From Magallana gigas (Eukaryota), in NCBI RefSeq assembly GCF_963853765.1, contig NC_088855.1:51646001-51710000 (forward strand): 64,000 nucleotides of DNA, written 5' to 3'. The notes beneath the pieces were generated by a model. That model made no database searches. It was given only the letters and a program-made list of their open reading frames with translations, and had not been told where the DNA came from. Of the stretch, positions 20,530 through 60,154 are shown in pieces. The position numbers were made by a program, and so were the translations under genes. How positions within the stretch are numbered: position 1 is the first letter of the stretch; each line of letters starts with the position of its first letter.

Positions 20530-21181
20530 TTACATATAAAATGTGTTTTGCACCCTTAGAAAGATATACGAAAGAAAAATGACAGCAGCAACACATAGTA
20601 ATAAAATGATAGCTATGGTAATGTTAGCATTGGTATTGCCTTTATTCCCGACGCTCGTCGTACACCGATCCTTTGGTTTTAAAGTTGCGGTCAGTATTTT
20701 TACATCGACTCTTGACGCTGTGACATTTTTTGAAAAAGTAATATTCTTCACTGGGTGCTTGGTCGTTATCGTACCATTTCCTAGAAGATGAATAATAATA
20801 ATACCAAGATTTATTGAGCTATATCATTCACATACATATTCGGACAAACAATCACGAAAATACACGATTTTTGTTTTCATCATAGGAAAAAAAGGTTTAT
20901 GTCATAAAAATAAAAAAACATGCGTACTTATTTGAATAAAATTATTAAAAGAGCACCTCTATTGTAGTGGACTGTAAGGTTTCCCGAGCAGCAGGTTGTT
21001 GAATTTCTGTACAACACAACAAAGTCTGAGTTTGTCACGGTCATATTGTACTGAATTCCAGCTGTACAACCAGACCAGTCTACAGTTGACACATTCACTG
21101 CTGTCTCTATTTTGACGTTAGAACACGAACTGCACCAGTTCACGTAAGAACAAAGAAGTATTTGAATGCTGAATTCCATAA
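20530..21181 (-). CDS. Locus B1: 6-Cys ectodomain, Thr-rich stalk, TM and ~10 aa tail (157 aa from the exon ATG)
   Basis: Domain exon 21181-20957 (phase 1-1) splices in frame to 20780-20530 (GNGTITTK...NITIAIILLLCVAAVIFLSYIFLRVQNTFYM*). Confidence 0.8.
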
Positions 21182-23045
21182 CTTATAAATAAGTGGTTCC
21201 ACTTTTCAACCAACCTCGCCTATCAATTTATTGAAGTATACTAGTTGATACAACAATGCAATTGGTAAAATACTTTACTTCAGAATTCATACGGAACTCG
21301 CCCATCAATCTATTGAAGTATACTGGTTGATACAACAAAATCATTGCATGCAATCAGTAATATACTTCAGTATTCATAAGGAAGCGAGATACAGGACATA
21401 ATTCGTACTGACGAGCAACTAATGCTAGCCACTCCTTAAAAAATAGAAGATTGATTCTCATTTCTGTAGATGCCCAAATTGAAATTCTGTTCAAACATTT
21501 ACAGCTTTTAAATTTATCTTTAATGTATTTATTAATAATAATGATATTTCATATATTAGGAGAGACTTGACAGTTAAAGAAATCTAAATACATCAGAAAC
21601 ATATCCAAACCAGTCGCAAATTAAAGATATATAAATAGAGCCAGAAGGCCTTATGATAGATTTGATAACGCCCGACCGAACAAATCACCTTATAATATTC
21701 AAATAATGATTCCTTATTACTTTCATCGTTAGAATTTATTGGACTATATACTACATACTATAAACCATTCGTAGTGTTTTCACAAAAACACTAAAAAATG
21801 TAAATATATGTATTTTTGGATATCTATATTTAGTTCAATTTCAATAGTAAGAAAAAACATCTAATTGTACTTTCATATATTTTGATCGTTACTTTATTTA
21901 GATTCTAACATGTCCGCCATTTTTTATATGACATTTATGAGGGCTGGATAGTCGTGACCATTTATAGACTTTATAAATCTCCTTGAAAAGAAGAGCTCTG
22001 TAGAAAGATATAGGGACACTTTGGAACTTTTAAGTAAATATTTATGGAATTATCCTTTAAACATTTACATGCTAAACAATTCATTTTTTTATAATTGAAG
22101 GTGGGTCTGGTTGCTAATTGTGTTGACCACCCATGCTCTTTAAAGTGACAAAGATTTGCTATCTTAAATTACCATTGCAAAATAAACTTGAGCTACTAAT
22201 TGTGCGTGTCAGTCTATTTTTTTACAATCAACATTCCTTTAAAATAGCCTTTTTGCGTACAATTCAAGTGACTAGATAATTCAAATTCAATATAAGAACA
22301 CTCATCTGAAAGCATTTTAATTCTTGTATATAATTATTTAGAGTTTTATTCTGATAACCGAACAGCCTTAGAAAACCAGAGGCAGTTTAGTAAATAGTTA
22401 CGACGCGTTTACCATTGCTCTACTGCAGAAAAAACGGCACACATCTACTCGTGGATTCAAAACATCTTTAATCTACATACCTTTTGCATTCATAGTTATA
22501 TAGATGCATTATCTTTTTTTGAAGCAAGAAAAACAATCAATATTATCATATTTGAGGTATTTAAAGATCTCCTTTGGCTGTACATATTATTTTCATTTCT
22601 TTTCAAGCTTTCTCTTGGAGAAAAAATATTTATTATCAGATTAGGTAATTAAGAACCTTAATATGCTTTTTAAATTAAAAAAAATTGTTATCGTCAATGA
22701 ATTTGGTTAATTCAAGTACAATTTTCTAACTACAGTTAGCTCAACAAAAATTTGTCTTAAGAGATTTTTCCTCAGTAGAAATGACACGAATCCTAAGTAC
22801 ACAATTTATTGAAAAAATCAAAAGGATTCAAAACGAGTTTTTGCAAATTTTGAGTTCTTTTCCTTTTCATTAAAAAAATGACATGTGGTAATAAGAACAG
22901 TGTTTAAAATCAAAAGTCCAAAGGAAAAATACAAAACAAAAACATAGCAAACGCTGACCTCTAAAAAATTAGTAGAGGGTAGTTGCCATGGCGAAGTGAG
23001 CGAACCGGTCACATCCACCGCGTGGTCTTTGTCGTAATTGTAATA

Positions 23046-23270
23046 CTGTAAATTCCTTTTTTACGCGAGTACTTAATTCCGCGATTCCGCTGTTTTGTAT
23101 CAAATTGCGAGAATACAAAATCGAGATCACCAACTTTTTATTATAAATTCCTAGTTCAAAACGGTCTTTAAAAAAAGCGAGATTTTAAATTCCGCGAGGG
23201 TTACTTCTCGCGATTTAACGTGAAAATTTTTTACTCGCGTTTACATATGCATGTAAATAGGAATCTACAG
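23046..23270. mobile_element. Short TA-flanked MITE (Tc1/mariner-derived type)
   Basis: Termini TA-ctgtaaattcct ... aggaatctacag-t(t)a form a ~12 bp TIR with one mismatch; interior rich in cgcga words. Confidence 0.55.
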
Positions 23271-23537
23271 TTACTGAGACACTCTTTTTTATTTAATAAG
23301 TGGAGAAACTGTGTAGAGTATGATTCAGTGTTCATTATATTCTATAAAGGTAAATTTGAGGTAGATTAAGTGAAACATTAAAGAATCATTACAGTGTGAT
23401 AAATTACGTCAAAATTTGAAGAAAACGTTTTTCGTTTTTCATTTATGTATTGATTGTTCTTAAGACACGTTATGATTTGGACATATCTGTAATTCGGTTT
23501 TTTTAAACGTCAAGTTTTGAATACATCACAACATATT

Positions 23538-25024
23538 CTAGCGGAAAAAAGAAACTTTGCATTATAAAATTTTCTATATCTATTGTTTTTATTCATAAAA
23601 TTTAAACAATCGATAATGGTATTGTTTTTGACAATATAGAATGGTAACCGTCCGGGTGCACGGACTTTTTCATGGTTAGTGAGCACCTGTTGTTTATTGA
23701 AGAATTTGTACGCACGAGTTTTACGGGCCAATACTGTTTGGAATAAGAACTGTAAAGGATTTGTTTAAACTTTTTTTGTTAAGGAAATCACTTTAGTTTC
23801 AACAAAATTTACCCCTATGTCATTCCACGACTCAACGAAAACCAACGTAATCGTGTTTTTGGGATGCTGCAAGCTGGAATGGCACAAACTAAAGTAGCAA
23901 GACACTTTGGAGTTCATCGGAACACCATCCAGTCATTATGGAGATGTTTTCAACAATCTGGCAACATCCAGGATCGACCACGCTCTGGGCGACCTCGTGT
24001 GACGTCACGTCAACAGGACAACCACATTAGACTTGTGCATCTGAGAAATCGCTTCCAGACAGCAAGTTTGACTGCCCGTAGCATTCCAGGGCTTCGACCA
24101 ATTAGTCCAAGAACTGTGCGTAATCGTCTGATCAGACCAACACGTCCAGCGGTGCGCCCAGTCCTGCTTCAACGTCATCGTATCGCCAGACTAGCGTGGT
24201 GCACACGACATCTGCGTTTCAGAATACAGGACTGGGCCAATATTCTGTTCACTGATGAATCCAGATTTCATTTGGATAGCAGTGACGGCCGTTGTAGGGT
24301 GTATCGTCGCGTTCGGGAGCGTTACAAGGACGCTTGTGTTGTGCAACGTCGACAATTTGGTGGAGGTAGCGTTATGGTGTGGGGTGAAATATCAGCAAGT
24401 GGAAAGACCCCTCTACAAATTGTCAATGGAAATCTCGGCGTACGCTCTCGAGATGAAAATATTCAGCGTCATGTGATACCCTTCATCCAAAGACATCAAA
24501 ATCACATCACTCTGCAGCAAGACAACGCAATGCCACATGTTGCACGTATAGTCAGGGACTTGTTTGTTCAACAGAATGTCGATGTCTTGCCATGGCCAGT
24601 TGTTTCCCCCGATTTGTCGCCGATCGAGCACGTCTGGGATGAAATGGAAAGACGTTTATGCCGTTACCAAATCAGCCAGTGACATTGGCTGATTTAGGCC
24701 AGGCTTTAATCAACATCTGGAACAACATCCCTCAAGCATTTCTGAACACTTTAGTGGCATCAATGAGGCGTCGCTGTCAAGCATGCGTGAACGCAAATGG
24801 TGGTCAAGTGTTATTAATTTTGTTAATTCAATTTCAAATACTTTCTCGAAAGTGACTTTCGAGTGTGCTGAAATTGACGTTATTCGACGTTGACATTAAT
24901 GTGTTATGAGATGTTGTTACGAATACATGTGTTAACAGTATTACAAAAAATAAAATTTGTTCATTGTAATTTTTAATTTTTTTTTTCATATATTAAATAA
25001 TGCACAGTTTCTTTTTTCCGCTAG
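23538..25024 (+). mobile_element. Tc1-family (DD34E) DNA transposon, defective copy 1
   Basis: ~28 bp TIRs ctagcggaaaaaagaaact..gcatt, TA on the right side. Transposase with HTH, FTDESRF, QQDNAMPH and SPDLSPIEHVWD; 34 residues counted between D2 and E. Start codon mutated to ATT, frameshift near 24660. Confidence 0.92.
23864..24855 (+). pseudogene. Tc1 transposase, frameshifted
   Basis: ORFs 23864-24682 and 24658-24855 (LPNQPVTLADLGQAL...SMRRRCQACVNANGG) together give the full protein. Confidence 0.88.
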
Positions 25025-26598
25025 TATATAAATCCTTTCGTCCTTGATGTCCTCCTGTCAGGGGCTTTAAAGGGGTTCATAAATCTTACCGTACAAACCA
25101 CTCAACATTTGTAAAAACGTATAAATGTAAGAAAAAAGGTTAGTTTGATGGATGTTTTCTTTGCACAGGCTTACAAACTGGTGAATAAACTTTTGATTAT
25201 CAAAGCTATTCCTATTTTTATTATTTCTTGTCGAGCTCAACAAAGATGATTTTAAAGAAATGTACTTATTTATAACATGTCCCGAGTTTTTGCTTCCTCA
25301 TCTGTTAAGTTGATATTTCGATAATCATTTATACCTTTCCGCCACTAGAATAAAAAACATCAGATTCTATTTTGAAACCGGTTTCAATAAAAATCAAAAA
25401 AGATTATCTACGGTGATTTTGCTTTGCAAACAACATTAAAGGTACCTAAATGATAAAATTAAAAAAAACTGTTGTAAAAAGTTCCCGGGTATTTCCGAAG
25501 GTCAACTTTTCCATTATAAATCTCGGTAAGAATGTAGTTATCGTCCACGTTAATACATCTGAGTAAAAATGATAACGTGTCAGTAGGGGAATCTTGGATT
25601 CCCCCCCCCTCCTTTTATTGATTTTATTCGTAATGCTATGACATGTGAGTGTATTTTCGTTAAAATTTGATAATCTGCAGCGGATACTGTAATCTACGAC
25701 ACACTATTAATCACATAACTGTCGCCTACAGTGCATTTGTAATTTACATAAGAAAAATTTTAAACCAACTTCAATGTGTACAGAGTAACAAATGTTATAT
25801 AAAGCTTTGAATAAATTTGATACTTATTGTTAAAAGGCAAAATATCATAAAAGTTTGAACAGTCGCATTTACTTGCATATTTAATTTAAAATAAATAAAT
25901 AAATCTAATTTTAAAAAGATATACATATAGATCAAACAATGACAAGGAAAAGTAAAAATTCAGCTACTGAATATAAGAAAGTAAATACCAATTGTTAAAA
26001 GATGATCGGTTTTGTTAGAAATCCTTTGGTTCTGTTAAAGTGCTTATCGACGAAAATCGTGCAATTTTTAAACGTTCCATCTTCATGTGATAATAATATC
26101 ATGAGTAGGCGACATGAAAAACACACATCTGTTATAAACCTTTACAACCGTAAAACATGGGTACATGAATGACCCCTGTTTAGCCATTTAAGTTTTTAAT
26201 GTTGTTAAGCCGAATATTTTTGATTTATTGCCAGTTTCTGCTAAGAGAGGCATTCAATTTCCGCATTCGATAATGTACTTTTGAGAATTCGAGAACCCGA
26301 GTTATACGTTCAACTTAAAAATAATCAATATTGGTATCAAGTGGAACATAACAATTCAATCAAATCAACATCAAAATACAGACTGATTATATTAAACACA
26401 TTTGCTGAAAGAGAACAATTGTATAATACGCATTTTGGGGGGGACATGAATCAATAAAACAAAGTTTATCGTCGAGTCATTTTTTTTCTTTTTTCTTTGC
26501 TACAACACTGATTGAAAATTTTTACTAAACCACTAACTAAAAATTTATGACATATATCACTGACATTACCAAAAATGCGATGGCAATCTTACAACAAG

Positions 26599-27396
26599 CT
26601 AGCCACTAAATATTGATTGAAATAAAATGACAAACACCATCATCAATACAATAATAGCGATAGGTATGTTGGAATAACAAACACTTGTGCCATGGTTGAA
26701 GTTTGTCAATGAGTGATTCACGACTGCTGCATTCATAGGTTTGGTATCAAATCTTGCGGTTGTTACACTGGCTGTTGGTTGACCTTAAAATATAAATGTT
26801 TTTAACAATCAGTCATACTTTGTTGTCCTTCCCTTTAGTTTATTATATTAAACCAAGGAAATTTCATTTACTTTCAATGCCATCCGCTAATATCAAACAT
26901 CACGCTGACTGTATTGGCATACTGTACACTATATCAGTTGGCAACTTGTGTATCATTCTCAGTGAAATGACTAAGTTGTAAAGTCGTAGCGACTCATTGT
27001 ATGCCCAGCGCTTGGCTTTAAAATTGATGTTGCGGTGTTTTCGATTTCGATGTGTAATATTTCTTTCTCAACGTAAGGCTAAGTGAATTTTTTGAAAGAC
27101 GGAATAGTTTTGCGATAATTTTTTTTGGTTAAAATCAGAACTTTAATAAAAGAAAAAATAAGTTTTCCTACCCATATTGTAGTGGATTGTAAGATTTCCC
27201 GAGCAGCAGGTTGTTGAATTTCTGTACAACAAAACAGAGTCTGAGTTTGTCACGGTCATGTTGAACTGTCTTGTATCTGTACAACCGGACCAGTCTACAG
27301 TTGTCACACTCACTGCTGTCCCAATATCAATATCAGAACATGAATTGCACCAATTTACGTATGAACAAAGAAAAAACTGGAAAGAAATGTCCATGT
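26599..27396 (-). CDS. Locus B2: 6-Cys ectodomain, stalk and C-terminal hydrophobic segment with no cytoplasmic tail (135 aa from the exon ATG)
   Basis: Exon 27396-27172 splices in phase 1 to 26783-26599 (GQPTASVTTARFDTKP...YSNIPIAIIVLMMVFVILFQSIFSG*). Confidence 0.8.
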
Positions 27397-27754: not shown

Positions 27755-30030
27755 TTATCGAGTGTTTAAAACGGATGTAACATCTGTTTTCCGTCGCAGT
27801 ATTTGTTTTACTTTACCCCAATTGTTATTATAAACCATTATCATGATGTAATCATGTTTAAGTTTGCCTTGTTTGGCAACAGTTCTAATATCTTTGTATT
27901 CACGAGACTGACATTCATTTTTAATTTTAAACGCTTCTACAACGTTTTCAGCATTTTCATAATGGTTCGAAACCTTACAAAAGATTAATATCTTTGATGG
28001 TACAGTAATAAATATACTGAAATGAATGGAAAATGCACTCTTTAAACTTAGCTCATTACTACCTTTGCTTACAGTGCCAACTTTTTTTCCTGTAAAGAAA
28101 TTTTGTTGTGTCTTTAGTCTGCCTGGTGAAATATTTAGAAAATAAAGTAAATTGTAAACAGTGTCCCAGTATATCTTAAATTTCAAAAGGTACGACCATC
28201 ATTACATATTTGGTCGGAGCATAAGACGAGTTTCGCATGTTTGGGGGGTCGCTAGAGGGATGGATCTCTGCTGAAGTTAAATGCTCTGCTAGACGGCTTC
28301 TTCTGGTTATCTTGGAAATTTTGTCTTTCCGTCCTTAAGAAGATTATAAAGATAATTCAGTTATGATATATACCAATATACACATAATCGAATGTTAATT
28401 GTTCCGTTTCTTGAAAGTAAAATACCCTTTAAATTACGTTTCATTTATCTCTCTAGGGTCATTCTTTTGAATTTCTTCGTAAATAATAATTGTATTGCAA
28501 CGCCTGTCAAGTAAAATATATAACTCCAAGAATAATTTAACACACTAGATTCTGTCATTAGATAGTTAAACTTGCAATATCCCTAAAACACACCCTTTTT
28601 TCTAGAGAAACAAACAAGAACCCAAATTAACATTTATTACCTAATAAAAAGGATTTTATTAAAACCGATGTATTGAACTGCCGGTCAATATGATATATTG
28701 GACCGGCAACGTATTTTGGAAAAAAAACCATCTGGTTTTCAAATTCATATGTAATAACAATTTTGAATACTTAGTACTATAATGGAATTAGGTAAAAAAA
28801 AAATCATAATTATTAAATGCCTGAGCAATCAATAGACTAGAATATTTTTCAATTGAGATAGGGAGTGAGTCAGTGTGTTTAATTGTCTGTGGCTGTTGGC
28901 CTCGGGCAATCTCATACATTAAGCTGTTCAAAACTCGAAGGTCAAAATATACTTCAACGATGACTGCTCATGATTGAATAATTATAAATGCTAAAACGGA
29001 TTGGCAGACAAAAAATTCCTGTCTTCCACCTTCCTTCCTGAGCATTTAGATGCAGAGATAGGAAAGGGCTTGTTATTGGCTTGCATGTTAGTGTTTCGGG
29101 GCTTATGGCTTAACAAAATGTCACTACAATGCTTTGTGAATAAACACAAACCACGGCTGTGGCGCAGTGTATTTTGTTTCTTTTTTCGATATTTAAAGGC
29201 AGTATTGAGCAATTTCAAATTAACTTAAATTAAAACCCCTCTCGGCTCGACATCGTCTTAGATTGCCTACAATTAATACATCAATTAATTGAAGCCATAA
29301 AAAGAATTGGAAACACGTTTTTGCAACTTTTCTGTTTTTCCTTCATCAATAAAACACTTGCTTTTTCCAAAAGTAGAGAAATTGTATGGAATAGTATTTT
29401 CATATTGTGCTCACTTCACATATTATTTGATTAGGCGCCGCTTTTTACATTTTCTCTAACTCAGGATTTACAATTTTTGTTGCTTATCGTAATCGTACTG
29501 TAATTTTGTCTACTAATCGTACCATCATAAAAAAGTGTTGAAGAATATTTTGAAAAATAAATTTTTCACCATATAATCAATATATCCCCTGCCAACTCTT
29601 CGGAAGGAAAAAGGATTCGACAACTACGTAAAAACTCCCGGTAGATAATTTGTACAATAGGGTGGTCAAAAAATAATATGAAAGATATCGATGACATCAA
29701 TATATATCATATTTTAATAATCAAATGCTTAATAATTCTACTTTACATATACATGCTAGTGTTGGATTCATTTTCTCAAATTGTTATCAGCGTAACAATT
29801 ATTTTTATTGATATATATTCAATTCCCTCATCTGTGTCTCGGATATTTTAATAAACATTCAGACAATTATAAAATGATTTAATCATACCGACATTGTAGT
29901 GGATTGTAAGATTTCTCGAGCAGCAGGACGTTCAATTTGTGTACAACACAACAGAGTCTGCGTTTGTCACAGTCATGTTGTACTTTCTTGTATCTGTACA
30001 ACCAGACTAGTCCACAATTGACACATTGAC
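27755..30030 (-). pseudogene. Locus B3: pseudogene of the long-tailed (B5-like) type
   Basis: 5'-truncated domain exon 30030-29889 with two nonsense codons (VD*SGC, YTN*TSCC). Tail exon 27973-27755 (NHYENAENVVE...ECQSREYKDIRTVAKQGK) is homologous to the B5 tail. Intron 29450-29660 aligns with B5 intron 39750-39960. Confidence 0.72.
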
Positions 30031-30478: not shown

Positions 30479-30704
30479 TATTAACAGATCTTATACACGT
30501 GATTAAAACATCCCGTTAAACGGTTGGATCAATGTATAAACATTTGAAAATTTATAATCATAGTTGTATTGACATGATCAAGCGAAACAGACATCACAGT
30601 AGATACACACGTTTTATCTTAAACGTACGAGTTTGTGAAGCGTTATCAGCATGCCGTGAGGTTTTTCTTTTGTTATCCTTTATTTATGTGATAAATAAAA
30701 AAAA

Positions 30705-31750: not shown

Positions 31751-32289
31751 TCATTCAAATGTTCTCCAGAACTTGCAAAGGGCATAGATGACACAACAGA
31801 TGGCACCAACACACGCCAACACAATGACAGCGATGATTATTCTAAAATATGAATTTTTCACGCTCCTCTCAAAGTTGATCCTTTGTGTCGTTTTATGGAT
31901 TCTGACGTCAGTTTCAGTTGATTTCTGTACGAACGAAAATTTACTTTCAATCATGATGCAAAGAAAGCGAAATTAGCAAATTAGATCAGGTTAGTTTTTG
32001 TAATTGTTATGCATGTTTAGTTTTAGATAATGCATAACTGTAAAAATTCGTGTATCTAGCTTACTGACATTGTAGTATATTGTAAGATTTCCCGAGCAGC
32101 AGGACGTTGAATTTCTGTACAACACAACAGAGTCTGAGTTTGTCACGGTCATGTTGTACTGTCGTGTATCTGTACATCCGGACCAGTCTACAGTTGACAC
32201 ATTCACTGCTGTCTCCAAGATGACGTTAGAACACGAACTGCACCAGTTCACGTAAGAACAAAGAAGTATTTGAAAGCTGAATTCCATAA
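31751..32289 (-). CDS. Locus B4: 6-Cys ectodomain, stalk, TM and short tail (about 130 aa)
   Basis: Domain exon starts at 32289. In-frame joining needs the phase-0 donor AAT|GTCAGT (32069) and acceptor GTACAG|AAA (31924), giving KSTETDVR...YFRIIIAVIVLACVGAICCVIYALCKFWRTFE*. Confidence 0.7.
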
Positions 32290-36956: not shown

Positions 36957-37400
36957 TCATTGAAAAATTATGACAAACGTTAGTGACATCATAAATATGA
37001 CAATAATTAACACTGATTCCATGATTTTGTCCGAGTGGTCTATGGCCACTGCGATCAAAGGTTTGGTATAGAATCTTGTTGTTGATATATTGTTTGTTGA
37101 CCTCCTTAGAAACAAAAGTAGATTTTCAACCATCATGCGGTAGAAACTGAAGATTATCATTTACATCTTTAAATAAAACTTTATATTCATTCTTTTCTTA
37201 ATCCTATAGTTTATCAAACCCATGTAAGGAAAAGAAAATTATGATCACCATTGCGCTGATTTTGTACTATAATTGTAGCTTGCAATACCTGCATATCATT
37301 GTTATCGACAGATCTCAATTATTAAGAAGGAGCAACTCTTTATGTTACCCGCACGTAGCATCAGCATTAAAGTTTTGTGAATTTATCACCATATATTACA
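36957..37400 (-). pseudogene. Orphan B2-like tailless stalk/TM exon plus adjoining intron; domain exon missing
   Basis: TTRFYTKPLIAVAIDHS...VLIIVIFMMSLTFVIIFQ* aligns with the last exon of B2. 37110-37400 aligns patchily with B2 intron 26784-27050. No 6-Cys exon upstream before the B5 stop. Confidence 0.6.
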
Positions 37401-37825: not shown

Positions 37826-40736
37826 TTAACAGTGGGTCGGATTTCCTTGTTTGGCATTAGCTGTTATATTTTCGTATTCTTTCGATTGGCATTGAATGGA
37901 TAATTGTGTAGGAATAAGACTTGTTCTCTGCAAATCCAAGTAGTTATTTGTCATTGTCAAAAATCTACCCCCAACCAACGTTGTCATTTGAGATTCTTCA
38001 GTAGCGTTAATAGCATCTTCATAATTGTCTGGAGCCTGAAAAATCAATCCTTTTTAAAATATGTTTCATTGAAAAGATAACAAATACATTAATTGATGCA
38101 GCAACACTTATATAACAGATTTGTGGTTCATTCAATGTGATGAAAAGTTATTTTGAAAATTTTAAAGAATTAAAAACAACCTTTGTTCGAAGGGGCACGA
38201 TGACGTCAAAAACATCACGTCAAAGTGACGCATGCACAATTCATTAAAATTGTAGATTAATAAAATGATAGTAATAATTTGATGTTAAATTAAAAGCTTT
38301 GGCAAAACTCGTATTTTTTTATTGATGCATATATGTTTCTTAGTGGAAAATGCACTCTTTGGAAATTCATTTACAATAAGGCATGGTTTTTTTAATTATC
38401 GCGCCAATTTTTGTTATAATTTTAAAACAACAAACCTTCTGTTCCAGTGCCGACTTTGTTTTTCTGAAAAGAGTTTAAACGAAAAACGTTTTGGTGGTAT
38501 GGGGACAAATTAAAAAAGAAGTTAAAAAGTAAAGCACATTTGACATTTCTAAATGTTACGTGTCAAAATGGTTTTGATAAAAAGCCTAGATTGTAATTTC
38601 CTCGTGTCAATGCTAGAGAACTGTGGAATTTTCAATAATTACAATTTTGCATACATTATATCTAACTGTACTGAAATTTAGATTTATTCATACCTATAAT
38701 GTCTATGGAATAGAAAGCAGACACCCAAGATGACTAGCAATGGTGCACATCCAAGTACTGTAATCATCTTATACATGATTAAAGTATCAGACGATTTTAG
38801 GATCTCTGTAGAATTACTAGTGGGATGAAACACTGCGGTTGTAAAATGCTCTGTTAGGAGGCCTTTCCTGGTTACCTTGGGACTTCTGACTTTTCACGAA
38901 TTAAAAATATATAAATCTATCTCAGTTATGTTATAAATCAATCAACACAAAATAAAATCTACATTTTCTCTATTCTTGAAAATGAAAGATATGCCAATAT
39001 AAGTTCAAAATGTTAAAGAAGAGATATCAGATAGGATTACTCTGTTGATCTCTTTACAATAATAATTATATTTCAGTGCTATTCCGTTAAATTATACCTT
39101 TCGAAGGGTTTTTTTTTAACAAACTAGATGCTGTCAGTTGACAACAATGCACTCAGTTATTTCTTCATACCCGGAAAACATTCAAAACTCCATAATTGAC
39201 ATATTAAAAATATTCAAGAACATGTACAAATTAAACATACAATGTTTAATTAAGTATGGGCCAAGTGTTTTCAATGAGATGGGTACTAAACAGGAGGGCA
39301 GACACAAAAAAATCCACCTCCAATCCCAACATACAATTTTTCAAATGTGAAATATAAGGGCTTGTTGTGAATTATTGCATATTAGTATTTCATGAGTCAT
39401 GATTGAGCAAAATAACATTTAAATGTTTTTTGAATGCAAAACAATCATGGGGTTGTATATTTCGTAACCTTTTATCCAGTAATGGACGTAAAGAGGGTTA
39501 GCTAGTATTAGGCTTTTTCAAATGAAGTAATAAAATAACAATTTGGGGCTCGTCGTCGTCTTGGACCTACGTTGTAATAGTTTTGATTCATTATAGGTAA
39601 TTGAATAATAAACCAAAAGGATATAAAACAATTTTTTGTTAGAGTAAGACTGAGATCTTCGCAATTACCCATAACTTTAAAGAAACTGTCATGAAAGAAT
39701 TTAGCTTATTGATCATTTTTCAATTAGCAGGACCTGACATTTGTTCCTTTTACTTAGAGTTTTTAATTTTACAATATTATGTTGCTTATCGTAATCATAC
39801 GAAAATAAATTGTTTTAAAACTTATAAAGAGTGGACTGTGTTTTAAAAAAGGATTTTTTTTCACCTAATAATCAATATACCTCCTTATAACCGTAAAGAG
39901 AAGCAGAGAGTCCACAATTTTGCAAGAAAACCCCAGTGGATTATTTGTGAACAATGTATACTAGTACTTATTTTAAAGATACACAAGAACATGAGAGTGA
40001 AGACCTATTTTTTGGATAAATAAAACATCTATTTTTTTAAAATATCGACTTCCATTTTTTTATGCATCAAAACTGTTGCTAACTCGCACAAATACATAAG
40101 CCTTTAATGAACCCGTCTTAAAGATTCCATCTTATATGCATGCAAGAGTTGGGTTATTTTAATACGCATTTCTTATCAACGTAAAGATTATTTCATTAAT
40201 ATATTATACACAATAAAAAAATTTTAAGCAAAAAATAAATCGACTTCTTATTTACCAGGAGGTATACTACCTTGATACATAGTCTTTTTAATCTATTACT
40301 AAATTACATTTTGTCATAATCTTTCGTTGATTTTTATCTCCTTGTTCACCCAATGAGGATTTTGGTCAGTAGCAACTATTGTTTTCCGTCCCATTCTGAC
40401 CAGTAAGGGTAAACTCTTCCACGACGAACTCTTTGATTATGTCAAAAGTAACTACACTATCTATATGTCAGAAATATAAATTAACATTAAAGAATAATTT
40501 GAATTATTTAATCTTACCTTCATTGTAGATAATTGAAAGATTTCCCGAGCAGCAGGTCGTAGAATTTCGGTACAACACAACAGAGTCTGAGTTTGTCACG
40601 GTCATGTTGTTCTGTCGTGTATCAGTACATCCGGACCAGTCTACAGTTGTCACATTTACTGCTGTCTCCAAGATGACGTTAGAACATGAACTGCACCAAT
40701 TCACATAAGAACAAATAAATAATTGGAAACTCATCT
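37826..40736 (-). CDS. Locus B5: 6-Cys ectodomain, stalk, TM and long tail with three Tyr motifs (216 aa from the exon ATG)
   Basis: Exons 40736-40518, 38889-38694 (TM MITVLGCAPLLVILGVCFLF), 38463-38436 (KTKSALEQK) and 38035-37826 (DNYEDA, NNYLDL, KEYENI). Phases 1,2,0 match A1 and the spliced frame is open. The 38889 acceptor (AAG) is weak. Confidence 0.7.
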
Positions 40737-45343: not shown

Positions 45344-46033
45344 TCAAATCCTCCATAATTGATGATGAAATGTCCTCAAAAACTTCAAAAAAATATGAAC
45401 CAAACATAAGATGGCCACCATACATGACAATACTATAGTAGCGATTAAAAGGCTGGAATACGAGTTTTTAAATTTTCTCATATGCTTCTCCATATTCGTC
45501 GTATTTTGGGTCCAATCATTGATGTCTTTTGATTTCTGTTCTAACAAACATTGTATTTCATTATAATGCATAAAAAGCAAAACATAACGCTAAACATAAC
45601 AATGGTATTTTACTGAACAGAATGTCGTTGTAACAAGGCCACTCGGTTAGTTAACTATTTAATTAAGGCAGATCCAGCCTTTTGTAACACATCGTTCTGA
45701 AATAATCTTTAAAAAATGGTCCAAAACATTAATCTTGTATGCTTGTTCGCTCTTAGAAATAAATAAATAAATATTATTAGCTTACTTGATTTTTTAAATA
45801 AAATTTACCAGCATTGTAGTGGACTGTGAGATTTCCCGAGCAGCAGGTCGTTGAATTTCTGTACAACACAACAGAGTCTGAGTTTGTCACTGCCATGTTG
45901 TTTTTTCTTGTATCTGTACAACCGGACCAGTCTACAGTTGACACATTCACTGATGTCTCTATTTTGACGTTAGAACATGAACTGCACCAGTTCACGTAAG
46001 AACAAAAAAATATCTGAAAGCTGAATTCCATAA
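45344..46033 (-). CDS. Locus B6: 6-Cys ectodomain, stalk, TM and short tail (139 aa from the exon ATG)
   Basis: Exon 46033-45809 splices in phase 1 to 45540-45344 (EQKSKDIND...KNSYSSLLIATIVLSCMVAILCLVHIFLKFLRTFHHQLWRI*). Confidence 0.82.
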
Positions 46034-49646: not shown

Positions 49647-49796
49647 NNNNNNNNNNNNNNNNNNNNNNNNNNNNNNNNNNNNNNNNNNNNNNNNNNNNNN
49701 NNNNNNNNNNNNNNNNNNNNNNNNNNNNNNNNNNNNNNNNNNNNNNNNNNNNNNNNNNNNNNNNNNNNNNNNNNNNNNNNNNNNNNNNNNNNNNNN
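49647..49796. other. Assembly gap (N run)
   Basis: 150 consecutive N. Confidence 0.99.
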
Positions 49797-50466: not shown

Positions 50467-51047
50467 GTGATGGGACCTTTGTAGTAATCCAAAAAAAATT
50501 CAAGTATATAAGAATACATGAATTGGATCAAACAGCAGACACAATGCCTATACATGTTCTCTCCTATAGCCAAGGTATAATATTTATATAAAATTTTACA
50601 CAGAATGTATTATTTTTGTCATACATTCAATTTTTATAATAGGTCAATAATATAGAAAGCATTGGAGAAGAAACAATACAAGGGAAAAAAACTAGAAAAA
50701 AGAAAACGGGGAAAAATAATAATTGAAATAGATAAGAATCATCAAATAATGATAATAAAGTGTACAGATTAATTACTAGTCTTAGAGAAAAATAGCTGTT
50801 GAGTAGAAGAAATTTGAAAATATCAATGACAAAAAATGATACAAGTAATTAACAGATGAGTGTTAAAACAACAGTTACTATAAATCAAACAAAAAACTTA
50901 GCAAATTCCTGGTGAAGGAATAATCTTAAAAATAAATCGGATATGTAAATTATCACAATAACGCATGTACCTTTTCCCGACGTTAGATTAAGTGAGTTAT
51001 GGTGGATTGTCAAAATCAGAATTTTAAAAAAACCCACATCTCTCTAC

Positions 51048-51261
51048 CGATATAGTAGTGAATAATGAGTTTCTCGAGCAGCATATGCTGTTAAGTGTTT
51101 GTACAACACAACAGAGTCAGAGGTTGTCACGGTCATGTTGTACAATAGAGTACTTGTACAACCGGACCAGTGTGCAATTCACGCATTTACTGCTGTTCTA
51201 GTATCAATGTTAGAACATTTACTGCACCAATCTATATAAGAACAAAAAAGAAACTGAACAG
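51048..51261 (-). pseudogene. B-type domain exon pseudogene
   Basis: MKISVQFLFCSYIDWCSKCSN...AVNA*IAHWSGCT...SDSVVLY: one nonsense codon plus frameshifts around the CC motif; donor ATC G|GTAGAG retained. Confidence 0.8.
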
Positions 51262-52287
51262 AAATTTTCATATGTTTGTCCTTACACACTTACACAAAGT
51301 CAAAGTAAATATATTGAAATTTAGTTATATAAATTGCACATATTTACGTTAGAGCTGACAAGGATTACATGTTATTAAACCGGTTTGTTTTTTTTTTCAA
51401 AAATATTTGCAGATAACGTGCAGCAAACCATATAATACATCTGTCCTTGAATACATTAGGTTTTATTATCTGTATATCGGGTTTGTAGAAAGATAGAAAC
51501 CTCACTTTGTATAGACTCACAAAACGTATTATACTTTTGTGCTATTTGATGCTTCTTTACAAACATTGAGGTAACTGAGAGATCAGTTAAACTTGACTTT
51601 CAGCAATATCTGAAAGCGCGTACTGATCTGTTTTCAGTGTGCAAATGAAACGAGTTGGATCATACTACATTTAATTTGCGGAACCTTGGAAAAGTTTCAC
51701 ATTTCGTGTTTATCTGTCGAAATATGTAATGAGCTTGACAAAAATAGAATACAGACTGACACACACTGACACTGACGGATTAGTTGTTTTATTGCTTTTT
51801 GTATCATTGTATGCTACGGTACGTCCAGATAATTTGGTTTGGTTTGTAGACGTCTAACTCCCACCAGCATCCGGCTTTTTGATATTTGTTACTTTTCCGA
51901 GCGTTTAATTGAGATAATTCTCAGTTAACCTGATTTTTTTCTTCAGGGTATCTCCCTCTTCAGAATACTACATCAGAATTGACGTTTATAGTTTATTTAC
52001 AGTTTGAAAACCACATACGCAACACACAGTACATCCTTTATAAAATCAACGTGAACTAGCCGCATTTACACAAAAAAAAACTTACTCACACACACTCACG
52101 CACTTACATGTGTGAAACCTACATTCAAACGAAAACCCCATTGCCCGTGCGGTGCAATCAATCGTAAAGAAATACCCATATGTTCATATTGAGCTATATT
52201 ATGCAAATAGAGTCCTTATCATGTAACACATGTATGTATCTGTAATATCCCGCTACACCTGTTACAATTCTGTTATCTTTATGATTG

Positions 52288-52959: not shown

Positions 52960-53661
52960 TCAGTATGACAAGTAAGAGAGGATAACTGCAGAGAAAAATG
53001 AGAACAAAATGACAGCCTCAGTAATGTTGTGATAAGAATGCGTATTGTTCTTAAATTTGTTCATTTGTGTGTTGTTGTTGGTCCCAGGATCAATGACTGT
53101 TGAGTACTGATCTAAAAAATTAGAAAGTTGACAATAAAATAAAACATTACATATTTTTTATCAAATGAAGATTATTGATAATTGATAATAATTTCATTTG
53201 TCATATTTTGTTAATTTTTTGTAAAAAAAAAAAGTTAGATTTGAAATTGAGACCATAACGCCACATTCATACTTTTCCGCGATACTTAAAATGTCTCATA
53301 TTTTTAGGCCTTGTTCAAGCTTTTCAGTAACATTACGTTGTACAATTATTTTCAAAATGGGAACAGAAAATATTTCTACATATTCTTTTTTTCAGAATTG
53401 AATTAATAAGTGTATTTTAGGAGTTGCTTACCAATGATGTAGTGGATTGTAAGATTTCCCGAGCAGCAGGACTCTGAATTTCTGTACAATACAACAGAGT
53501 CTGAGTTTGTCACGGCCATGTTGTGCTGTATTGTATCTGTACAACCGGACCAGTCTACAGTTGACACATTCACTGCTGTCTCAATTTGGACGTTAGAACA
53601 CGAACTGCACCAATTCACGTAAGAGCAAAGAAGAAATTGAATGCTCAATGCCATTAGTTGT
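52960..53661 (-). CDS. Locus B7: 6-Cys ectodomain, short stalk and terminal hydrophobic segment with no tail (124 aa from the exon ATG)
   Basis: Domain exon ends at 53432 and splices in phase 1 to 53111-52960 (DQYSTVIDPG...HNITEAVILFSFFSAVILSYLSY*). Confidence 0.78.
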
Positions 53662-55975: not shown

Positions 55976-55989
55976 ATAGGGGTTATCTT

Positions 55990-57318: not shown

Positions 57319-58116
57319 CTAAAGCAGGTTTGTTACAAAATTTAAAAAAACCCATTTTATATATCAGGAAATTTGCATTTTTTGCATAATAATAAAAGTA
57401 TATATTAATGAAATATATAATATTGTGTTTCGTTGTATTTAAATCCTTTTCAAAGAAAATATCAATGTACAATATGCTTATGTTTTAAGGTTTGTGTGTG
57501 GATGATTAATTTAATGTAATCAATAATAGTGATGTTTTTTTAATTTAATTTGATGTTTTGTCCTGTTTCAAAATGCACAAAATGAAAATGTAGCATTTAT
57601 TGACATTAGAATGTATACACAAACATAAAGAATTTATAAATAAGTACCTCATAAAACATTCACACGGGTAATTGTAATATAAACAATGTTGGTATATGGA
57701 TCGTTTTGAACGTTGCAATATCTGTTTTAATTAGCTTAATTGGTATCGTGTACATTTTGCACAAATGCATAATTTGTCGCTCTTAATTACCCAATTAACA
57801 TATAGTAACTTCGTGGTACATGTACATGACTAAGAACCTCTTATACACCAATGCTATTTTAATTTCTAAAATCAATTTTTTCAAGAGCATAGATTGGATT
57901 TTTCAAAATATTATCCATCACTAAGCTATGCAAAGATACATATGTTACAACATAAGTTTGGACATCCATTTTATGATGTCACACACCTTTTAAGTCCATA
58001 TAATATTCTGGGGAGTGAATATTAAATTACTTTAGGCGAGAACAATACATGAAGCGCTCTTTTAAGATTAGTAAGTGTTGTTAACATTTTGAGTTAATAT
58101 GACTGTTAATTTCATA

Positions 58117-60154
58117 TCAGCGTAATTGACACGCGGTAATGTTAAAACGTGGGGTACGTCTCAGACTTGAAAAGCCAAGGGCAAAAAAGATGATGGCACT
58201 GACACATGACAATATAATAATAGCAGCAATCAGAGTGTTAGAGTAAGCTTTAGTCTTATTTTTCTCCAACTGGTCAGTTTGCGTGGTGTTCTGGGCTCTG
58301 CTATAGACTCCAGTGGCCGTCACAGTATTTGAGGGACTTTTTTTCGTCATATTTAAAGTCTGTGAAGTCATTCCATTCCCTAAAAAGAGAAAAGATTCAC
58401 TATACCACTACACGGAATGTGTACCTTTTACTTTATGTTCAATAAAAATTCACAAAAGAACGAAATAATGATCAAATTAATCGTTTTTTGTTTTAGATTA
58501 TAAAACATCAAAAAATAATTTCTTCCAAAAATTAAAATTTTAATCATAAACAATTTTGATTGAATAATTGATCTTTTCATAATATTTTAAACGCTCCGGG
58601 TTTTTTTCTTGGTAATTTTTATGAATCGAATCTTTTCTAAATCTCGGCGCCACAAGAAAATCCAACTTTTTTATCGACGACAACTGAACTGTTTGAATGT
58701 CTCAAGGTTAAAACTTTTGGTTACATATACATGTAAGGGTATCTTTGCGAAAACAAAAAAACAAGAAGACGCCAATTTTAGAACAATAAATAAATGTCTT
58801 TTATAATATTTTAGACGTAAAAAATGTACAATTCATTTCATTATTTTAAACTTTGAAGAAAAAGCCGGACATGGGCACGACAACTCATAGTTCTTTTAAG
58901 TTGCAGAGATCTGGAATCAATTTAGAATCATTCAAGTTAACACTATTTGTCTTTGGAATTTATCTGGGACAATGATCAATGTTTGGTTGAAAAAAATATT
59001 GAAACTAAATCTTTAATTTTTTATACTATTGGTTTATGCCACTTATGTGAACAAATGTTGTCTTTACGAGCAATGCCTTGGGGTTTTATTGCATTAAATG
59101 GTTATTTAGGAACGTTAAAGGTCCAGTGCGACTTATCTTTAATCATTTTTCATTTCTCCTATCTCCGCAATGTGAAGATTTCCACTACGTAATTTGGGAG
59201 TAATATATGATACTCTTCTATCAGGATAAAAAGATTTTAGGAAAAATACGTTAACATTTATTTATAAGTGTTTAATTGACAGTTTGACATTTGCTATGAT
59301 AAGGAAAATTTAAAGTAGTCTACAAAATATCCTACTTATCAATAATAATTTACTCACAAATAGATGCCATTAAAAATAAGCTTTGGAGCTTTCATGGGTT
59401 ATTTTGTTACGATATTTATTATGTCTTTTTCAAATAAAACTCGTGTTTGTATGTTTAAAATTATGATAACATGATACAACAATAGACTATCTATCTATAC
59501 TATATAAAAAATAAGTCTGGTAATATACTCTGAATTTATTGGCTTAAATAGGTTTAAATGCAAATAAAGAAGAATACATTTTAATGGTAATTTATCTAAA
59601 ATTTATTTATATTTCATTAGTTGTTTCTATTTAATCTTTTCAATGTGTTCTTGAAAAGTAATTGGCTAAGAACTACAATGCCCGTTCACGTTAAGTTTTT
59701 ATTTTGTAGAAAATGTTATTTCAATAAGGAGTAATCGGATGGTTTTGTCGGTTGTCATATTTTCAAAATGTGAAAAGCTTATTCAAAACTTCCTTTTATC
59801 TATTTTTTTCTTCATAAAACCATGCTAGATAAACAAAAACTTTATTAAGAACAATGCTCAAAAATATTCATATTCTTATATTAATCATATATAAATATCA
59901 ACAAAACTAATACAATTACCGATATAGTAGTGGATTGTAAGATTTCCCGAGCAGCAGGTCTTAGAATTTCTGTACAACACAACAGAGTCTGAGTTTTTCA
60001 CGGTCGTGTTGAACTTTCGTGTATCTGTACAACCGGACCAGTCTACAGTTAACACATTCACTGCTGTATCGATTCGGACGTTAGAACATGTATTGCAGCC
60101 ATTTACGAAAGAGCAAAGAAGCTTTTGAATGCTCAATTCCATTATATGTAAATG
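58117..60154 (-). CDS. Locus B8: 6-Cys ectodomain, Thr-rich stalk, TM and ~17 aa tail (161 aa from the exon ATG)
   Basis: Domain exon ends at 59920 and splices in phase 1 to 58379-58117 (GNGMTSQT...YSNTLIAAIIILSCVSAIIFFALGFSSLRRTPRFNITACQLR*). Confidence 0.8.

What the first reader, a model, noticed from the sequence alone, without database searches (positions are those of the whole stretch)
20957..60142. Ectodomain exons homogenised while the rest of each gene is highly diverged: signature of exon-restricted gene conversion
Seen: B domain exons are about 80-92% identical in protein, but adjacent introns and stalk/TM exons barely align except between specific pairs. Over the 64-aa core I count 5 differences between B4 (short tail) and B5 (long tail), but 9 between B4 and B6, although B6 is clearly B4's closest relative by TM exon. 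Variation concentrates after Cys3 (VKIE/IDIG/VILE/VQIE/VRID), after Cys4 (AGIQY/DTRQF/DTRKN/DTIQH) and before CC. Established: conversion that keeps ligand-binding domains matched is documented for paired Siglecs. Inference: the same process operates here, although purifying selection alone could explain part of it.
Basis: partly seen in the sequence, partly recalled or inferred. Interest (0 to 1): 0.72.

Follow-up and report, generated by a model that had tools for sequence, protein, structure and literature searches.

The report
Gene conversion homogenises oyster receptor exon
In a row of small, oyster-only membrane-protein genes, the piece coding for the outer domain keeps being copied between neighbouring genes while the rest of each gene has drifted beyond recognition; this is a clean new example of a known process (gene conversion), found in an uncharacterised protein family.

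Summary
Observation confirmed; interpretation supported. The window (Magallana gigas-type genome) holds seven intact and two degenerate copies of a 223-nt first coding exon, all on the minus strand. They belong to an 18-copy array that runs about 54 kb past the window.

Evidence inside the window:
- Copies are 81-90% identical in DNA from the ATG to the splice donor. Mismatch jumps to random level (0.63-0.72) within 20 nt on both sides.
- Exon-1 dS is 0.18-0.47. The neighbouring stalk/TM exon is saturated (motif-anchored pS 0.62, dS about 1.3).
- The exon is a mosaic: B3 differs from B1 at 1 of the first 60 nt, and from B4 at 4 of the central 80 nt. Sawyer-type p is 0.001 or lower.

Evidence from elsewhere:
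- A duplicated gene/pseudo-exon quartet beyond the window shows two internal conversion tracts.
- A contig orthologous to B3 by both flanks (82-88%) has a domain exon equidistant from all copies.
- Proteins from another M. gigas assembly differ more in the domain (14.8%) than in exon 2 (6.9%).

Purifying selection alone is therefore excluded.

The paired-Siglec analogy is untested. The domain has no Pfam match and no fold relative. The N gap touches no compared segment.

The parts
20957..21179 (-). B1 exon 1: coding block from the ATG to the phase-1 donor (G|GT). Short-tail gene.
20533..20823 (-). B1 exon 2: stop-free segment holding the stalk, the TM and an 8-aa tail before the stop. Acceptor predicted, not RNA-verified.
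27172..27394 (-). B2 exon 1. Donor verified by RNA contigs of three studies. The 5'UTR is contiguous for at least 160 nt upstream of the ATG.
   Evidence: joint 26783|27172; pieces 27272-27557 and 27217-27474
26602..26783 (-). B2 exon 2 (stalk plus TM, short tail). Acceptor verified. The 388-nt GT..AG intron is 26784-27171.
27755..28328 (-). Exon-2-like and Tyr-motif tail-like segments of the unit whose domain exon is degenerate here. The gene is intact in another M. gigas assembly (P0002).
29893..30030 (-). Degenerate B-domain exon (two stops, 5' part missing). It is still 86-89% identical to B2, B3 and B5.
32069..32287 (-). B3 exon 1 (phase-0 donor AAT|GT, as in protein P0003). Its 5' 60 nt are nearly identical to B1 and its centre to B4.
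31754..31972 (-). B3 exon 2 segment (stalk, TM, 7-aa tail, stop).
36960..37160 (-). Orphan exon-2-like remnant related to B2 exon 2 (z=12, 39% aa identity). No domain exon of its own was found.
37826..38047 (-). Candidate cytoplasmic exon of B4 with YxxL and YxxI motifs (the 'long tail'). Not RNA-verified.
38687..38893 (-). B4 exon 2 (stalk plus TM followed by HRHYRYE).
   Evidence: (P0001)
40518..40734 (-). B4 exon 1 (ATG displaced by two codons).
45809..46031 (-). B5 exon 1.
45347..45589 (-). B5 exon 2 segment (stalk, TM, short tail). Closest window relative of B3 exon 2, yet only 61% nt identity (dS 1.42).
49647..49796 (.). Assembly gap (150 N) between B5 and the degenerate copy at 51045. 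No compared segment touches it. Continuity unknown.
51045..51271 (-). Older degenerate B-domain exon (stop codon, about 75% identity to the others).
53432..53654 (-). B6 exon 1.
52963..53157 (-). B6 exon 2 segment (matches P0032 residues 74-124 at 94%).
59920..60142 (-). B7 exon 1. The most divergent intact copy in the window.
58120..58383 (-). B7 exon 2. Together with its introns it is 84% identical over 1958 nt to the unit at window coordinate about 97-99 kb, beyond the window.

Best explanation
What it is. The array is an old tandem family of two-exon (some three-exon or more) genes for small oyster-specific membrane proteins. Each protein has a 74-aa, six-cysteine, N-glycosylation-rich N-terminal domain, then a Ser/Thr-rich stalk, one TM helix and a short basic or longer Tyr-motif tail.

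How it works. The gene units duplicated long ago: exon 2, introns, UTRs and promoters are saturated or unalignable. The coding block of exon 1 keeps being overwritten in patches of tens of nucleotides by sequence from other copies, pseudo-exons included. This happens by interlocus (non-allelic) gene conversion, and sometimes by unequal crossing-over inside the exon.

Why it is confined to the block. Only this block is still similar enough to pair, so exchange is confined to it. Exchange is most effective in its middle. Selection on the protein keeps the ends (ATG, donor) similar enough to bound the block.

Net effect. Paralogues stay alike (dS 0.2-0.4), while alleles and orthologues of any one gene differ in the domain more than elsewhere.

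Shown: the divergence contrast, the mosaics, the tracts, and the orthologue and allele patterns. Inferred: the molecular mechanism (heteroduplex repair during meiosis or mitosis), the N-out topology, and any role in recognition.
For: 1. Sharp block. Mismatch is 0.04-0.31 inside the exon and 0.58-0.72 outside. Flanks are random for all pairs among B1-B6.

2. Synonymous contrast within the same genes. Exon-1 dS has median 0.26 and maximum 0.47. Exon-2 dS runs from 0.7 to saturated. The ungapped, motif-anchored TM core has pooled pS 0.615, dS 1.29.

3. Gradient. Third-position mismatch is 0.36, 0.10 and 0.145 in the first, middle and last thirds of the exon.

4. Mosaics in the window. B1-B3 differ at 1/60 against 24/163 sites (p=0.004). 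B3-B4 differ at 4/80 against 24/143 (p=0.011). Sawyer-type SSCF gives p=0.0005 (7 copies) and 0.001 (B1-B6). PHI gives p=0.035 (7 copies) and 0.0005 (13 copies).

5. Quartet of segmental duplicates (window coordinates 77.4, 78.5, 94.6 and 95.7 kb). 12 of the 21 E77/E94 differences fall in exon nt 67-137, and at all 12 E94 equals the neighbouring pseudo-exon. 10 of the 14 P78/P95 differences fall in nt 130-184, and at all 10 P95 equals E94. Flanks follow the duplication pattern.

6. Flank kinship differs on the two sides of the exon. B7's upstream flank matches P78, P95 and E99; its downstream flank matches E77 and E99.

7. Contig L009 is collinear with B3 on both sides (5' flank 82.5%, exon 2 about 88%). 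Its domain exon is equidistant from all 13 copies (44-52 differences; B3 44). Its centre differs at 24/80 sites.

8. Proteins from another M. gigas assembly, matched by exon 2, differ at 54/366 domain residues against 23/333 exon-2 residues (p=0.001). The B7-type protein carries a B2-type patch.

9. Control. The A-type paralogues in the same window show equal divergence in the domain exon (71.5%) and the tail exon (70.3%), so the domain is not intrinsically hyperconserved.

10. The same exon-limited 87% match without flank similarity occurs between two copies in a Crassostrea virginica locus.
Against: - The exon is short, so trees are weak. The TM-based clade (B3,B5) is not rejected by the domain data (AU p=0.11). 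PHI is not significant for B1-B6 alone (p=0.23).
- The clearest tracts (the quartet) lie outside the window. The direction of transfer cannot be fixed. The duplicated units could be haplotigs rather than true duplicates, although that would not remove the tracts.
- The species of L009 is unknown.
- Logan contigs L010, L011, L012 and L014 could be k=31 assembly chimeras and were not used as evidence.
- The other-assembly comparison is at protein level only, and allelism is inferred from exon 2.
- GC3 is only slightly raised (0.47 against 0.41), so there is no clear biased-conversion footprint.
- The 5' boundary at the ATG shows that selection contributes to the pattern.
Confidence: 0.8

Rival explanations
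1. Old duplicates under purifying selection only. The domain is conserved because its structure and ligand binding are constrained, while stalk, TM and introns drift freely. No sequence exchange is involved.
For: Six cysteines and several sequons are invariant. The framework pN/pS is 0.26. The block is bounded by the ATG and the donor, that is by coding limits.
Against: - Selection on the protein does not lower dS: exon-1 dS is 0.18-0.47 against about 1.3 in exon 2 of the same genes.
- Third positions in the central third mismatch at only 10%.
- Between alleles and orthologues the domain is the more variable part.
- A-type paralogues show no such excess conservation.
Confidence: 0.04
2. A recent burst of whole-gene tandem duplication. 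All copies are young, and the flanks only look unrelated because of fast indel and transposon turnover in AT-rich oyster DNA.
For: The array holds transposons: Tc1/mariner copies at 23534-25030 and 42309-43796. Young duplicates do exist in the distal part (93-95% units). Domain exons cluster by species (M. gigas against C. virginica).
Against: - Exon 2 is coding, lies 100-400 nt away and can be aligned without gaps on its TM motif, yet it is saturated at synonymous sites.
- Pairs with exon dS 0.13-0.19 (B7-E99, B7-E77) still align at 84% and 73.5% over 2 kb of intron. Pairs at dS 0.2 should therefore align too, and they do not.
- The B3 flanks are conserved at 82-88% in the L009 source, so the flanks are not decaying that fast.
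Confidence: 0.05
3. Reciprocal unequal crossing-over inside the exon (hybrid genes, copy-number change), rather than non-reciprocal conversion, produces the mosaics. Homogeneity then follows from repeated expansion and contraction of the array.
For: Flank kinship switches across the exon in the distal copies. A hybrid 'B2 upstream plus B3 downstream' contig exists in one public run (L014). Copy content differs between assemblies: the unit at 29.9 kb is intact elsewhere.
Against: The quartet tracts are internal, with the duplication pattern restored on both sides inside the exon. That marks non-crossover conversion. B1-B6 all have unique flanks on both sides, so simple crossover products are not what is seen in the window. 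L014 may be an assembly chimera, because B2 and B3 share an exact 31-mer.
Confidence: 0.08
4. Assembly or polishing artefact: reads from paralogues were mis-mapped and 'converted' the exons in silico, or haplotigs were laid in tandem.
For: The window has two scaffold gaps. The distal 93-95% units could be haplotigs.
Against: Independent RNA contigs of three studies match B2 exon 1 with 0-1 differences and show the predicted splice. DNA runs hold 85-88% of the words of 26.5-32.4 kb. Gene models from other assemblies show the same family with the same architecture. At 81-90% identity between copies, mis-polishing is unlikely to create the pattern.
Confidence: 0.03

Closest known systems
Paired Siglec receptors (Siglec-5/14, Siglec-11/16): gene conversion confined to the ligand-binding exons (from my own knowledge of the literature; not re-read here)
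   Same: Neighbouring membrane-receptor genes whose N-terminal extracellular coding block is kept alike by interlocus conversion, while the TM and tail parts differ. Both short-tail and long-tail (Tyr-motif) members are present.
   Different: - This is an 18-copy array, not a pair.
- The domain is not an Ig V-set. It is an unclassified 74-aa six-Cys beta domain with no Pfam or fold match.
- Short-tail members have no charged TM residue, so no activating partner is indicated.
- The ligand is unknown.
- Conversion here also diversifies alleles.
Concerted evolution and patchwork conversion in tandem immune-type gene arrays (MHC class I/II peptide-binding exons, KIR/LILR) (own knowledge)
   Same: Short conversion tracts within one exon. 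A mosaic of shared motifs among paralogues. Alleles more variable in the recognition exon than elsewhere. A star-like exon tree.
   Different: An invertebrate, oyster-restricted family. No sign of pN/pS above 1 with the crude measures used. No function is known.
Chicken immunoglobulin pseudo-V gene conversion (own knowledge)
   Same: Upstream pseudo-exons with stop codons share tracts with the adjacent intact exon. Pseudo-exons lie 1.1 kb upstream of E77 and of E94.
   Different: The evidence here is for germline exchange only. Nothing indicates somatic, programmed conversion. The direction of transfer is unresolved.

Membership tests
Interlocus gene conversion / concerted evolution of a gene segment | The segment's neutral (synonymous) divergence between paralogues is much lower than that of adjacent segments of the same genes | tested here: met
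   Exon-1 dS 0.18-0.47, against exon-2 dS about 1.3 and random flanks
Interlocus gene conversion / concerted evolution of a gene segment | Mosaic structure: runs of shared variants that switch partner along the segment more than chance allows | tested here: met
   Sawyer-type SSCF p<=0.001. PHI p=0.035 (7 copies) and 0.0005 (13 copies), but 0.23 for B1-B6 alone. B1-B3 and B3-B4 segment contrasts p=0.004 and 0.011
Interlocus gene conversion / concerted evolution of a gene segment | Internal tracts flanked on both sides by the 'true' genealogy (non-crossover events) | tested here: met
   The E77/P78 against E94/P95 quartet has tracts at exon nt 67-137 and 130-184. It lies outside the window.
Interlocus gene conversion / concerted evolution of a gene segment | Paralogues within a genome are closer to each other than to the orthologue defined by flanking sequence | tested here: met
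   L009 (B3 orthologue by both flanks) differs from all 13 copies by 44-52 of 223 nt, while the copies differ from each other by about 22-45. This rests on one orthologue only, from a source species that is unknown.
Interlocus gene conversion / concerted evolution of a gene segment | Tree of the converted segment significantly incongruent with the tree of the unconverted parts | tested here: inconclusive
   AU p=0.11 for (B3,B5) and p=0.037 for (B7,E99,E77). The domain tree is star-like.
Interlocus gene conversion / concerted evolution of a gene segment | GC-biased conversion footprint (raised GC3) | tested here: inconclusive
   GC3 is 0.47 in exon 1 against 0.41 in exon 2
Paired activating/inhibitory receptors (Siglec-, KIR-like logic) | Inhibitory member with a canonical ITIM, (I/V/L/S)xYxx(I/V/L), in the tail | tested here: not met
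   The candidate long tail of B4 has NNYLDL, KEYENI and DNYEDA. None has the -2 aliphatic or Ser residue. The exon is not RNA-verified.
Paired activating/inhibitory receptors (Siglec-, KIR-like logic) | Activating member with a basic residue in the TM helix for an ITAM adaptor | tested here: not met
   The TM helices of B1, B2, B3, B5 and B7 carry no K or R. They share an IAxIxLxC motif.
Paired activating/inhibitory receptors (Siglec-, KIR-like logic) | Shared ligand specificity of the paired ectodomains | not testable with these tools
   No ligand is known
Any curated protein family or known fold for the B domain | Significant profile or structural match | tested here: not met
   Pfam: none. 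The AF2 model has pLDDT 93.5. Foldseek PDB and AFDB give E>1. VIA-align best Z is 4.0. ESM Atlas TM is below 0.5.

The most novel reading that the evidence does not exclude
The array is a germline cassette-shuffling system. Intact exons and upstream pseudo-exons act as a donor library that keeps rewriting the variable patches (after Cys3, after Cys4, before CC) of a fold-orphan, oyster-specific surface protein. Each haplotype then carries its own repertoire. This would be a recognition locus (pathogen, symbiont, gamete or self/non-self) diversified by conversion, analogous in logic to pseudo-V conversion or MHC patchwork but on an unrelated domain. The protein would, moreover, reach the surface without a cleavable signal peptide.
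Probability: 0.12. Interest if true: 0.8.

Novelty: new member of a known kind. Interest (0 to 1): 0.45.

Why it matters
It gives a well-controlled invertebrate example of segment-restricted concerted evolution. Adjacent exons of the same genes differ about five-fold in synonymous divergence, and the actual tracts are visible.

It flags an uncharacterised, oyster-restricted membrane-protein family as a candidate recognition locus. The family is found in Magallana, Crassostrea, Ostrea and Saccostrea, and its domain has no known fold relative. Its variable patches are exchanged between copies and differ strongly between haplotypes.

For annotation and population genomics of oysters it is a warning. 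Orthology at this locus must be assigned from exon 2 and the flanks, not from the domain. Short-read or k-mer assemblies will produce chimeras here.

Other first-reader notes of this scan report conversion-like mosaics in further oyster families (not checked here), so the process may be common in this genome.

Tried and rejected
- Pfam on the domain, stalk/TM and tail ORFs gave nothing above threshold.
- Fold searches in PDB, AFDB clusters, PDB-wide VIA-align and the ESM Atlas found no relative.
- PHI on B1-B6 alone was not significant.
- GC3 as a biased-conversion footprint was weak.
- Crude pN/pS gave no signal of positive selection in the variable patches (0.55-0.9).
- Logan contigs L010, L011, L012 and L014 look like inter-paralogue hybrids. 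They were set aside, because the near-invariant stretch of the exon contains exact 31-mers shared by copies, so de Bruijn chimeras cannot be excluded.
- DNA of the other M. gigas assembly could not be fetched for P0033 and P0037, so the allele comparison stayed at protein level.
- A 38-nt, 89% match between a C. virginica exon 2 and the E113-type TM exon turned out to be a family-wide TM motif. It was not used as proof of orthology.
- A paper search for the family (LOC117686652) and for oyster exon-level conversion found nothing specific.
- Continuity across the N gap could not be tested.

Full report
**Setting**

The window is G000:C3:51646001-51710000 of a 564-Mb oyster genome. Protein hits carry the names 'Uncharacterized protein, Magallana gigas' and 'LOC117686652 [Crassostrea gigas]', and an old M. 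gigas model matches the window at 100% over 46 residues.

The window is AT-rich (about 30-33% GC). It carries several transposons:
- a retroelement with RVT_1 and an integrase-SAM-like ORF at 6.1-10.4 kb;
- two Tc1/mariner copies, at 23534-25030 and 42309-43796;
- an RT-bearing element at 60.7-62.4 kb.

**What is there**

All B-domain exons lie on the minus strand. Seven are intact. Their 73-codon blocks are:

| Copy | Coordinates |
|---|---|
| B1 | 20961-21179 |
| B2 | 27176-27394 |
| B3 | 32069-32287 |
| B4 | 40522-40740 |
| B5 | 45813-46031 |
| B6 | 53436-53654 |
| B7 | 59924-60142 |

Two copies are degenerate: 29893-30030 and 51045-51271. A search of the whole genome finds 18 copies, all in one minus-strand array that runs to window coordinate about 118 kb. 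Several of the distal copies carry stop codons. I fetched the neighbouring 80 kb and analysed the 144-kb stretch.

Its B4, B5 and B6 are my B3, B4 and B5. With that mapping its counts of 5 and 9 differences reproduce exactly.

**Gene structure**

- The exon opens with a conserved in-frame ATG and ends at a G|GTAAG donor. The donor is phase 1, except in B3, which uses a phase-0 donor 4 nt upstream.
- Every gene model in the protein libraries starts at this methionine. That includes distant relatives from C. virginica, Ostrea edulis and Saccostrea cucullata.
- RNA contigs from three independent studies show the joint 26783|27172. This is a 388-nt GT..AG intron, exactly the predicted B2 exon 1 to exon 2 splice.
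- Those contigs also run unspliced at least 160 nt upstream of the ATG. The domain exon is therefore the first exon, with its own 5'UTR.
- Exon 2 encodes a Ser/Thr/Asn-rich stalk, one TM helix and a short basic tail followed by a stop in B1, B2, B3, B5, B6 and B7. B4 and the unit with the degenerate exon at 29.9 kb have further Tyr-motif tail segments.

- Copies are 81-90% identical in DNA over the 219-223 nt.
- blastn hits between copies stop at the exon.
- 300-nt flanks on either side are indistinguishable from random for every pair among B1-B6.
- Averaged over the 21 window pairs, mismatch is 0.63-0.72 up to the ATG, 0.04-0.31 inside, and 0.58-0.70 from the donor on.
- Exon 2 is recognisably homologous only at protein level. 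The best window pair, B3-B5, has z=16.7, 42% aa identity and 61% nt identity.

**The gap**

The 150 N at 49647-49796 lie between B5 and the degenerate copy at 51045. No family exon maps near them, and no segment used in any comparison touches them. I could not test continuity and did not try to recover the letters. The gap could hide an exon 2 of the degenerate unit. The conclusions do not depend on it.

**Is this more than selection? Synonymous divergence**

Nei-Gojobori dS over the 64-codon core is 0.18-0.47 among window copies (median 0.26), with dN 0.04-0.16. For exon 2 of the same genes, dS runs from 0.7 to saturated. To avoid alignment artefacts I anchored 23 codons, without gaps, on the shared TM motif IAxIxLxC. 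Pooled pS is then 0.615 (dS 1.29).

Adjacent exons of the same genes therefore differ about five-fold in neutral divergence, which purifying selection cannot produce.

Two internal calibrations agree:
- Pairs that are true recent duplicates (B7-E99, B7-E77; exon dS 0.13 and 0.19) still align at 84% and 73.5% over 2 kb of intron. Pairs at exon dS of about 0.2 ought to align as well, and they do not.
- The A-type paralogues in the same window are equally diverged in the domain exon (71.5%) and the tail exon (70.3%). The domain is not intrinsically hyperconserved.

Within the exon, third-position mismatch is 0.36, 0.10 and 0.145 in the first, middle and last thirds. This is the gradient expected if tracts must start and end inside the homologous block.

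**Direct traces of exchange**

In the window, B3 differs from B1 at 1 of the first 60 nt but at 24 of the remaining 163 (p=0.004). B3 differs from B4 at 4 of the central 80 nt but at 24 of the other 143 (p=0.011).

| Test | 7 window copies | B1-B6 | 13 copies |
|---|---|---|---|
| Sawyer-type SSCF permutation | p=0.0005 | p=0.001 | p=0.0005 |
| PHI-type | p=0.035 | p=0.23 | p=0.0005 |

Beyond the window, the unit [pseudo-exon P78, gene E77, exon 2] has been duplicated as [P95, E94, exon 2], with 93-95% identity in the flanks. In this quartet:
- E77 and E94 differ at 21 of 343 aligned columns. Twelve of these lie in exon nt 67-137, and at all twelve E94 carries the base of its neighbouring pseudo-exon.
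- P78 and P95 differ at 14 columns. Ten of these lie in nt 130-184, and at all ten P95 carries the base of E94.
- Both ends of the exon and both flanks follow the duplication pattern.

These are internal, non-crossover tracts. The direction of transfer cannot be fixed.

In addition, the flank families on the two sides of the exon do not coincide. B7's upstream flank groups with P78, P95 and E99, and its downstream flank with E77 and E99. E77's upstream flank groups with E94 and E113. Recombination breakpoints therefore fall in or at the exon.

**Orthologue and allele comparisons**

A 1.1-kb genomic contig from a public run (L009, SRR20718604; species unknown) is collinear with B3 on both sides and with no other copy. 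Its 5' flank is 82.5% identical, the start of the intron about 85%, and exon 2 about 88%. Its domain exon differs from B3 at 44 of 223 nt and from the other twelve copies at 45-52. In the central 80 nt it differs from every copy at 22-27 sites. The flanks say 'orthologue of B3'. The exon says 'outgroup to all M. gigas copies'. That is concerted evolution.

Proteins from another M. gigas assembly were matched to our genes by exon 2:

| Gene | Protein | Domain differences | Exon-2 differences |
|---|---|---|---|
| B2 | P0033 | 11/74 | 3/55 |
| B3 | P0003 | 8/73 | 4/56 |
| B6 | P0032 | 11/74 | 2/50 |
| B7 | P0037 | 22/71 | 10/86 |
| E99 | P0006 | 2/74 | 4/86 |
| Pooled | | 14.8% | 6.9% (p=0.001) |

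The B7-type protein carries the B2-type patch CNSCSHIDIGTAVNV and is closer to B2 (14 differences) than to B7 (22). The domain is thus the least diverged part between paralogues and the most diverged part between alleles, which is what patchwise exchange predicts.

In a C. virginica locus (L015), two copies match at 87% over 274 nt with unrelated flanks, while another pair is uniformly about 70-75% identical over a kilobase. The phenomenon therefore recurs in a second species. Domain exons cluster by species.

**Limits**

- The exon is short and its tree is star-like. The supported groups are (B3,B4) at 86/93, (B7,E99) at 96/91 and (E77,E94) at 93/95.
(B7,E99,E77) gives p=0.037.
- GC3 is only slightly raised.
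- pN/pS is below 1 everywhere: 0.26 in the framework and 0.55-0.9 in the patches.
- The 5' edge of the block is the start codon, not the exon edge. Selection on the protein therefore helps to define where homology, and hence exchange, persists.
- Four further Logan contigs look like inter-paralogue hybrids. They may be k=31 chimeras and were not used.

**What the protein is**

- There is no Pfam match.
- The family is restricted, as far as the libraries show, to oysters: Magallana, Crassostrea, Ostrea and Saccostrea.
- An AlphaFold model built on a 24-sequence alignment is confident (pLDDT 93.5). It is all-beta, and the N-terminal residues 3-10 form a strand of the domain.
- It has no relative in PDB, AFDB clusters or the ESM Atlas.
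- Six conserved cysteines, conserved N-x-S/T sequons, an S/T-rich stalk and basic residues after the TM helix argue for an extracellular N-terminal domain. No cleavable signal peptide is apparent. This remains unexplained.
- Features of paired receptors were not met: neither a canonical ITIM nor a basic TM residue is present.

**Verdict**

It is better worded as conversion, with some unequal crossing-over, confined to the coding block of exon 1 and bounded by selection. The process is well known from vertebrate receptor and MHC families. What is new is the family and the clarity of the contrast.

Other first-reader notes of this scan list conversion-like mosaics in other oyster gene families (unchecked). 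The scan has therefore seen this kind of signal before, on other DNA.

Noticed in passing
window 20957-60142 (all B exon 1 copies); model: The protein starts at the domain's own methionine. In-frame stops lie just upstream in B1, B3 and B5, and the 5'UTR is unspliced in RNA contigs. AlphaFold builds residues 3-10 into the beta sheet. There is thus no obvious cleavable signal peptide, although sequons, six Cys and the positive-inside rule point to an extracellular domain. Topology is unresolved.
   Followed up: partly
window 2052-2435 (+), 3340-3597 (+), 14674-15012 (-), 11845-12132 (-); L008 about 5860-6095 and 7505-7815: There are three 'A-type' genes with a homologous C-x5-C-x2-C...C...CC domain (31% identical to B) and Tyr-rich tail exons. 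Domain and tail exons are equally diverged between them (about 70%), so there is no exon-limited homogenisation. I used them as an internal control.
   Followed up: partly
beyond the window: window coordinates 78545-78763 and 95722-95944 (L002, L004): Pseudo-exons with a W-to-stop change sit 1.1 kb upstream of the intact exons E77 and E94 and share conversion tracts with them. The layout recalls pseudo-V donor arrays.
   Followed up: partly
L014 (Logan SRR327436), L012 (SRR6063083), L011, L010: Public-run contigs join the upstream part of one copy to the downstream part of another, for example B2 5' flank plus B3 intron and exon 2. They are either real hybrid-gene haplotypes from unequal crossing-over or k=31 assembly chimeras through the near-invariant exon core.
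   Followed up: partly
window 29893-30030 with 27755-28328: This unit's domain exon is broken here (two stops, 5' part missing). The same gene is intact in another M. gigas assembly (P0002, A0A8W8MUM1). This is presence/absence or pseudogene polymorphism within the species.
   Followed up: no
window 6121-10452: A retroelement whose internal ORFs match RVT_1 and an integrase N-terminal SAM-like domain (a tyrosine-recombinase-type, DIRS-like layout). It is bounded by 98-99% identical repeats: 6121-6253 with 6481-6613, and 6304-6480 with 10277-10452.
   Followed up: partly
window 23534-25030 (+) and 42309-43796 (-): Two Tc1/mariner-type transposon copies (DDE_3, HTH_Tnp_Tc3_2), 89.6% identical and in opposite orientation, inserted between B genes. 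A third copy lies in L008.
   Followed up: partly
window 30637-31227: A repeat between the degenerate exon at 29.9 kb and B3 is extremely abundant in RNA-library contigs (word depth in the thousands). The overlapping 172-aa ORF at 30913-31431 has no Pfam match.
   Followed up: no
L015 5040-5310 vs 9967-10240 (Crassostrea virginica, CM130316.1): The same exon-limited similarity (87% over 274 nt, with unrelated flanks) occurs between two copies of the C. virginica array. There the shared block extends about 35 nt upstream of the ATG.
   Followed up: partly
exon 2 of B1, B2, B3, B5, B7 and distal copies; C. virginica L015 4537-4574 and 6149-6186: The TM helices share a motif, I-A-x-I-x-L-x-C, conserved even between M. 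gigas and C. virginica despite otherwise saturated exon 2. It may mark a partner-binding or palmitoylation site.
   Followed up: no
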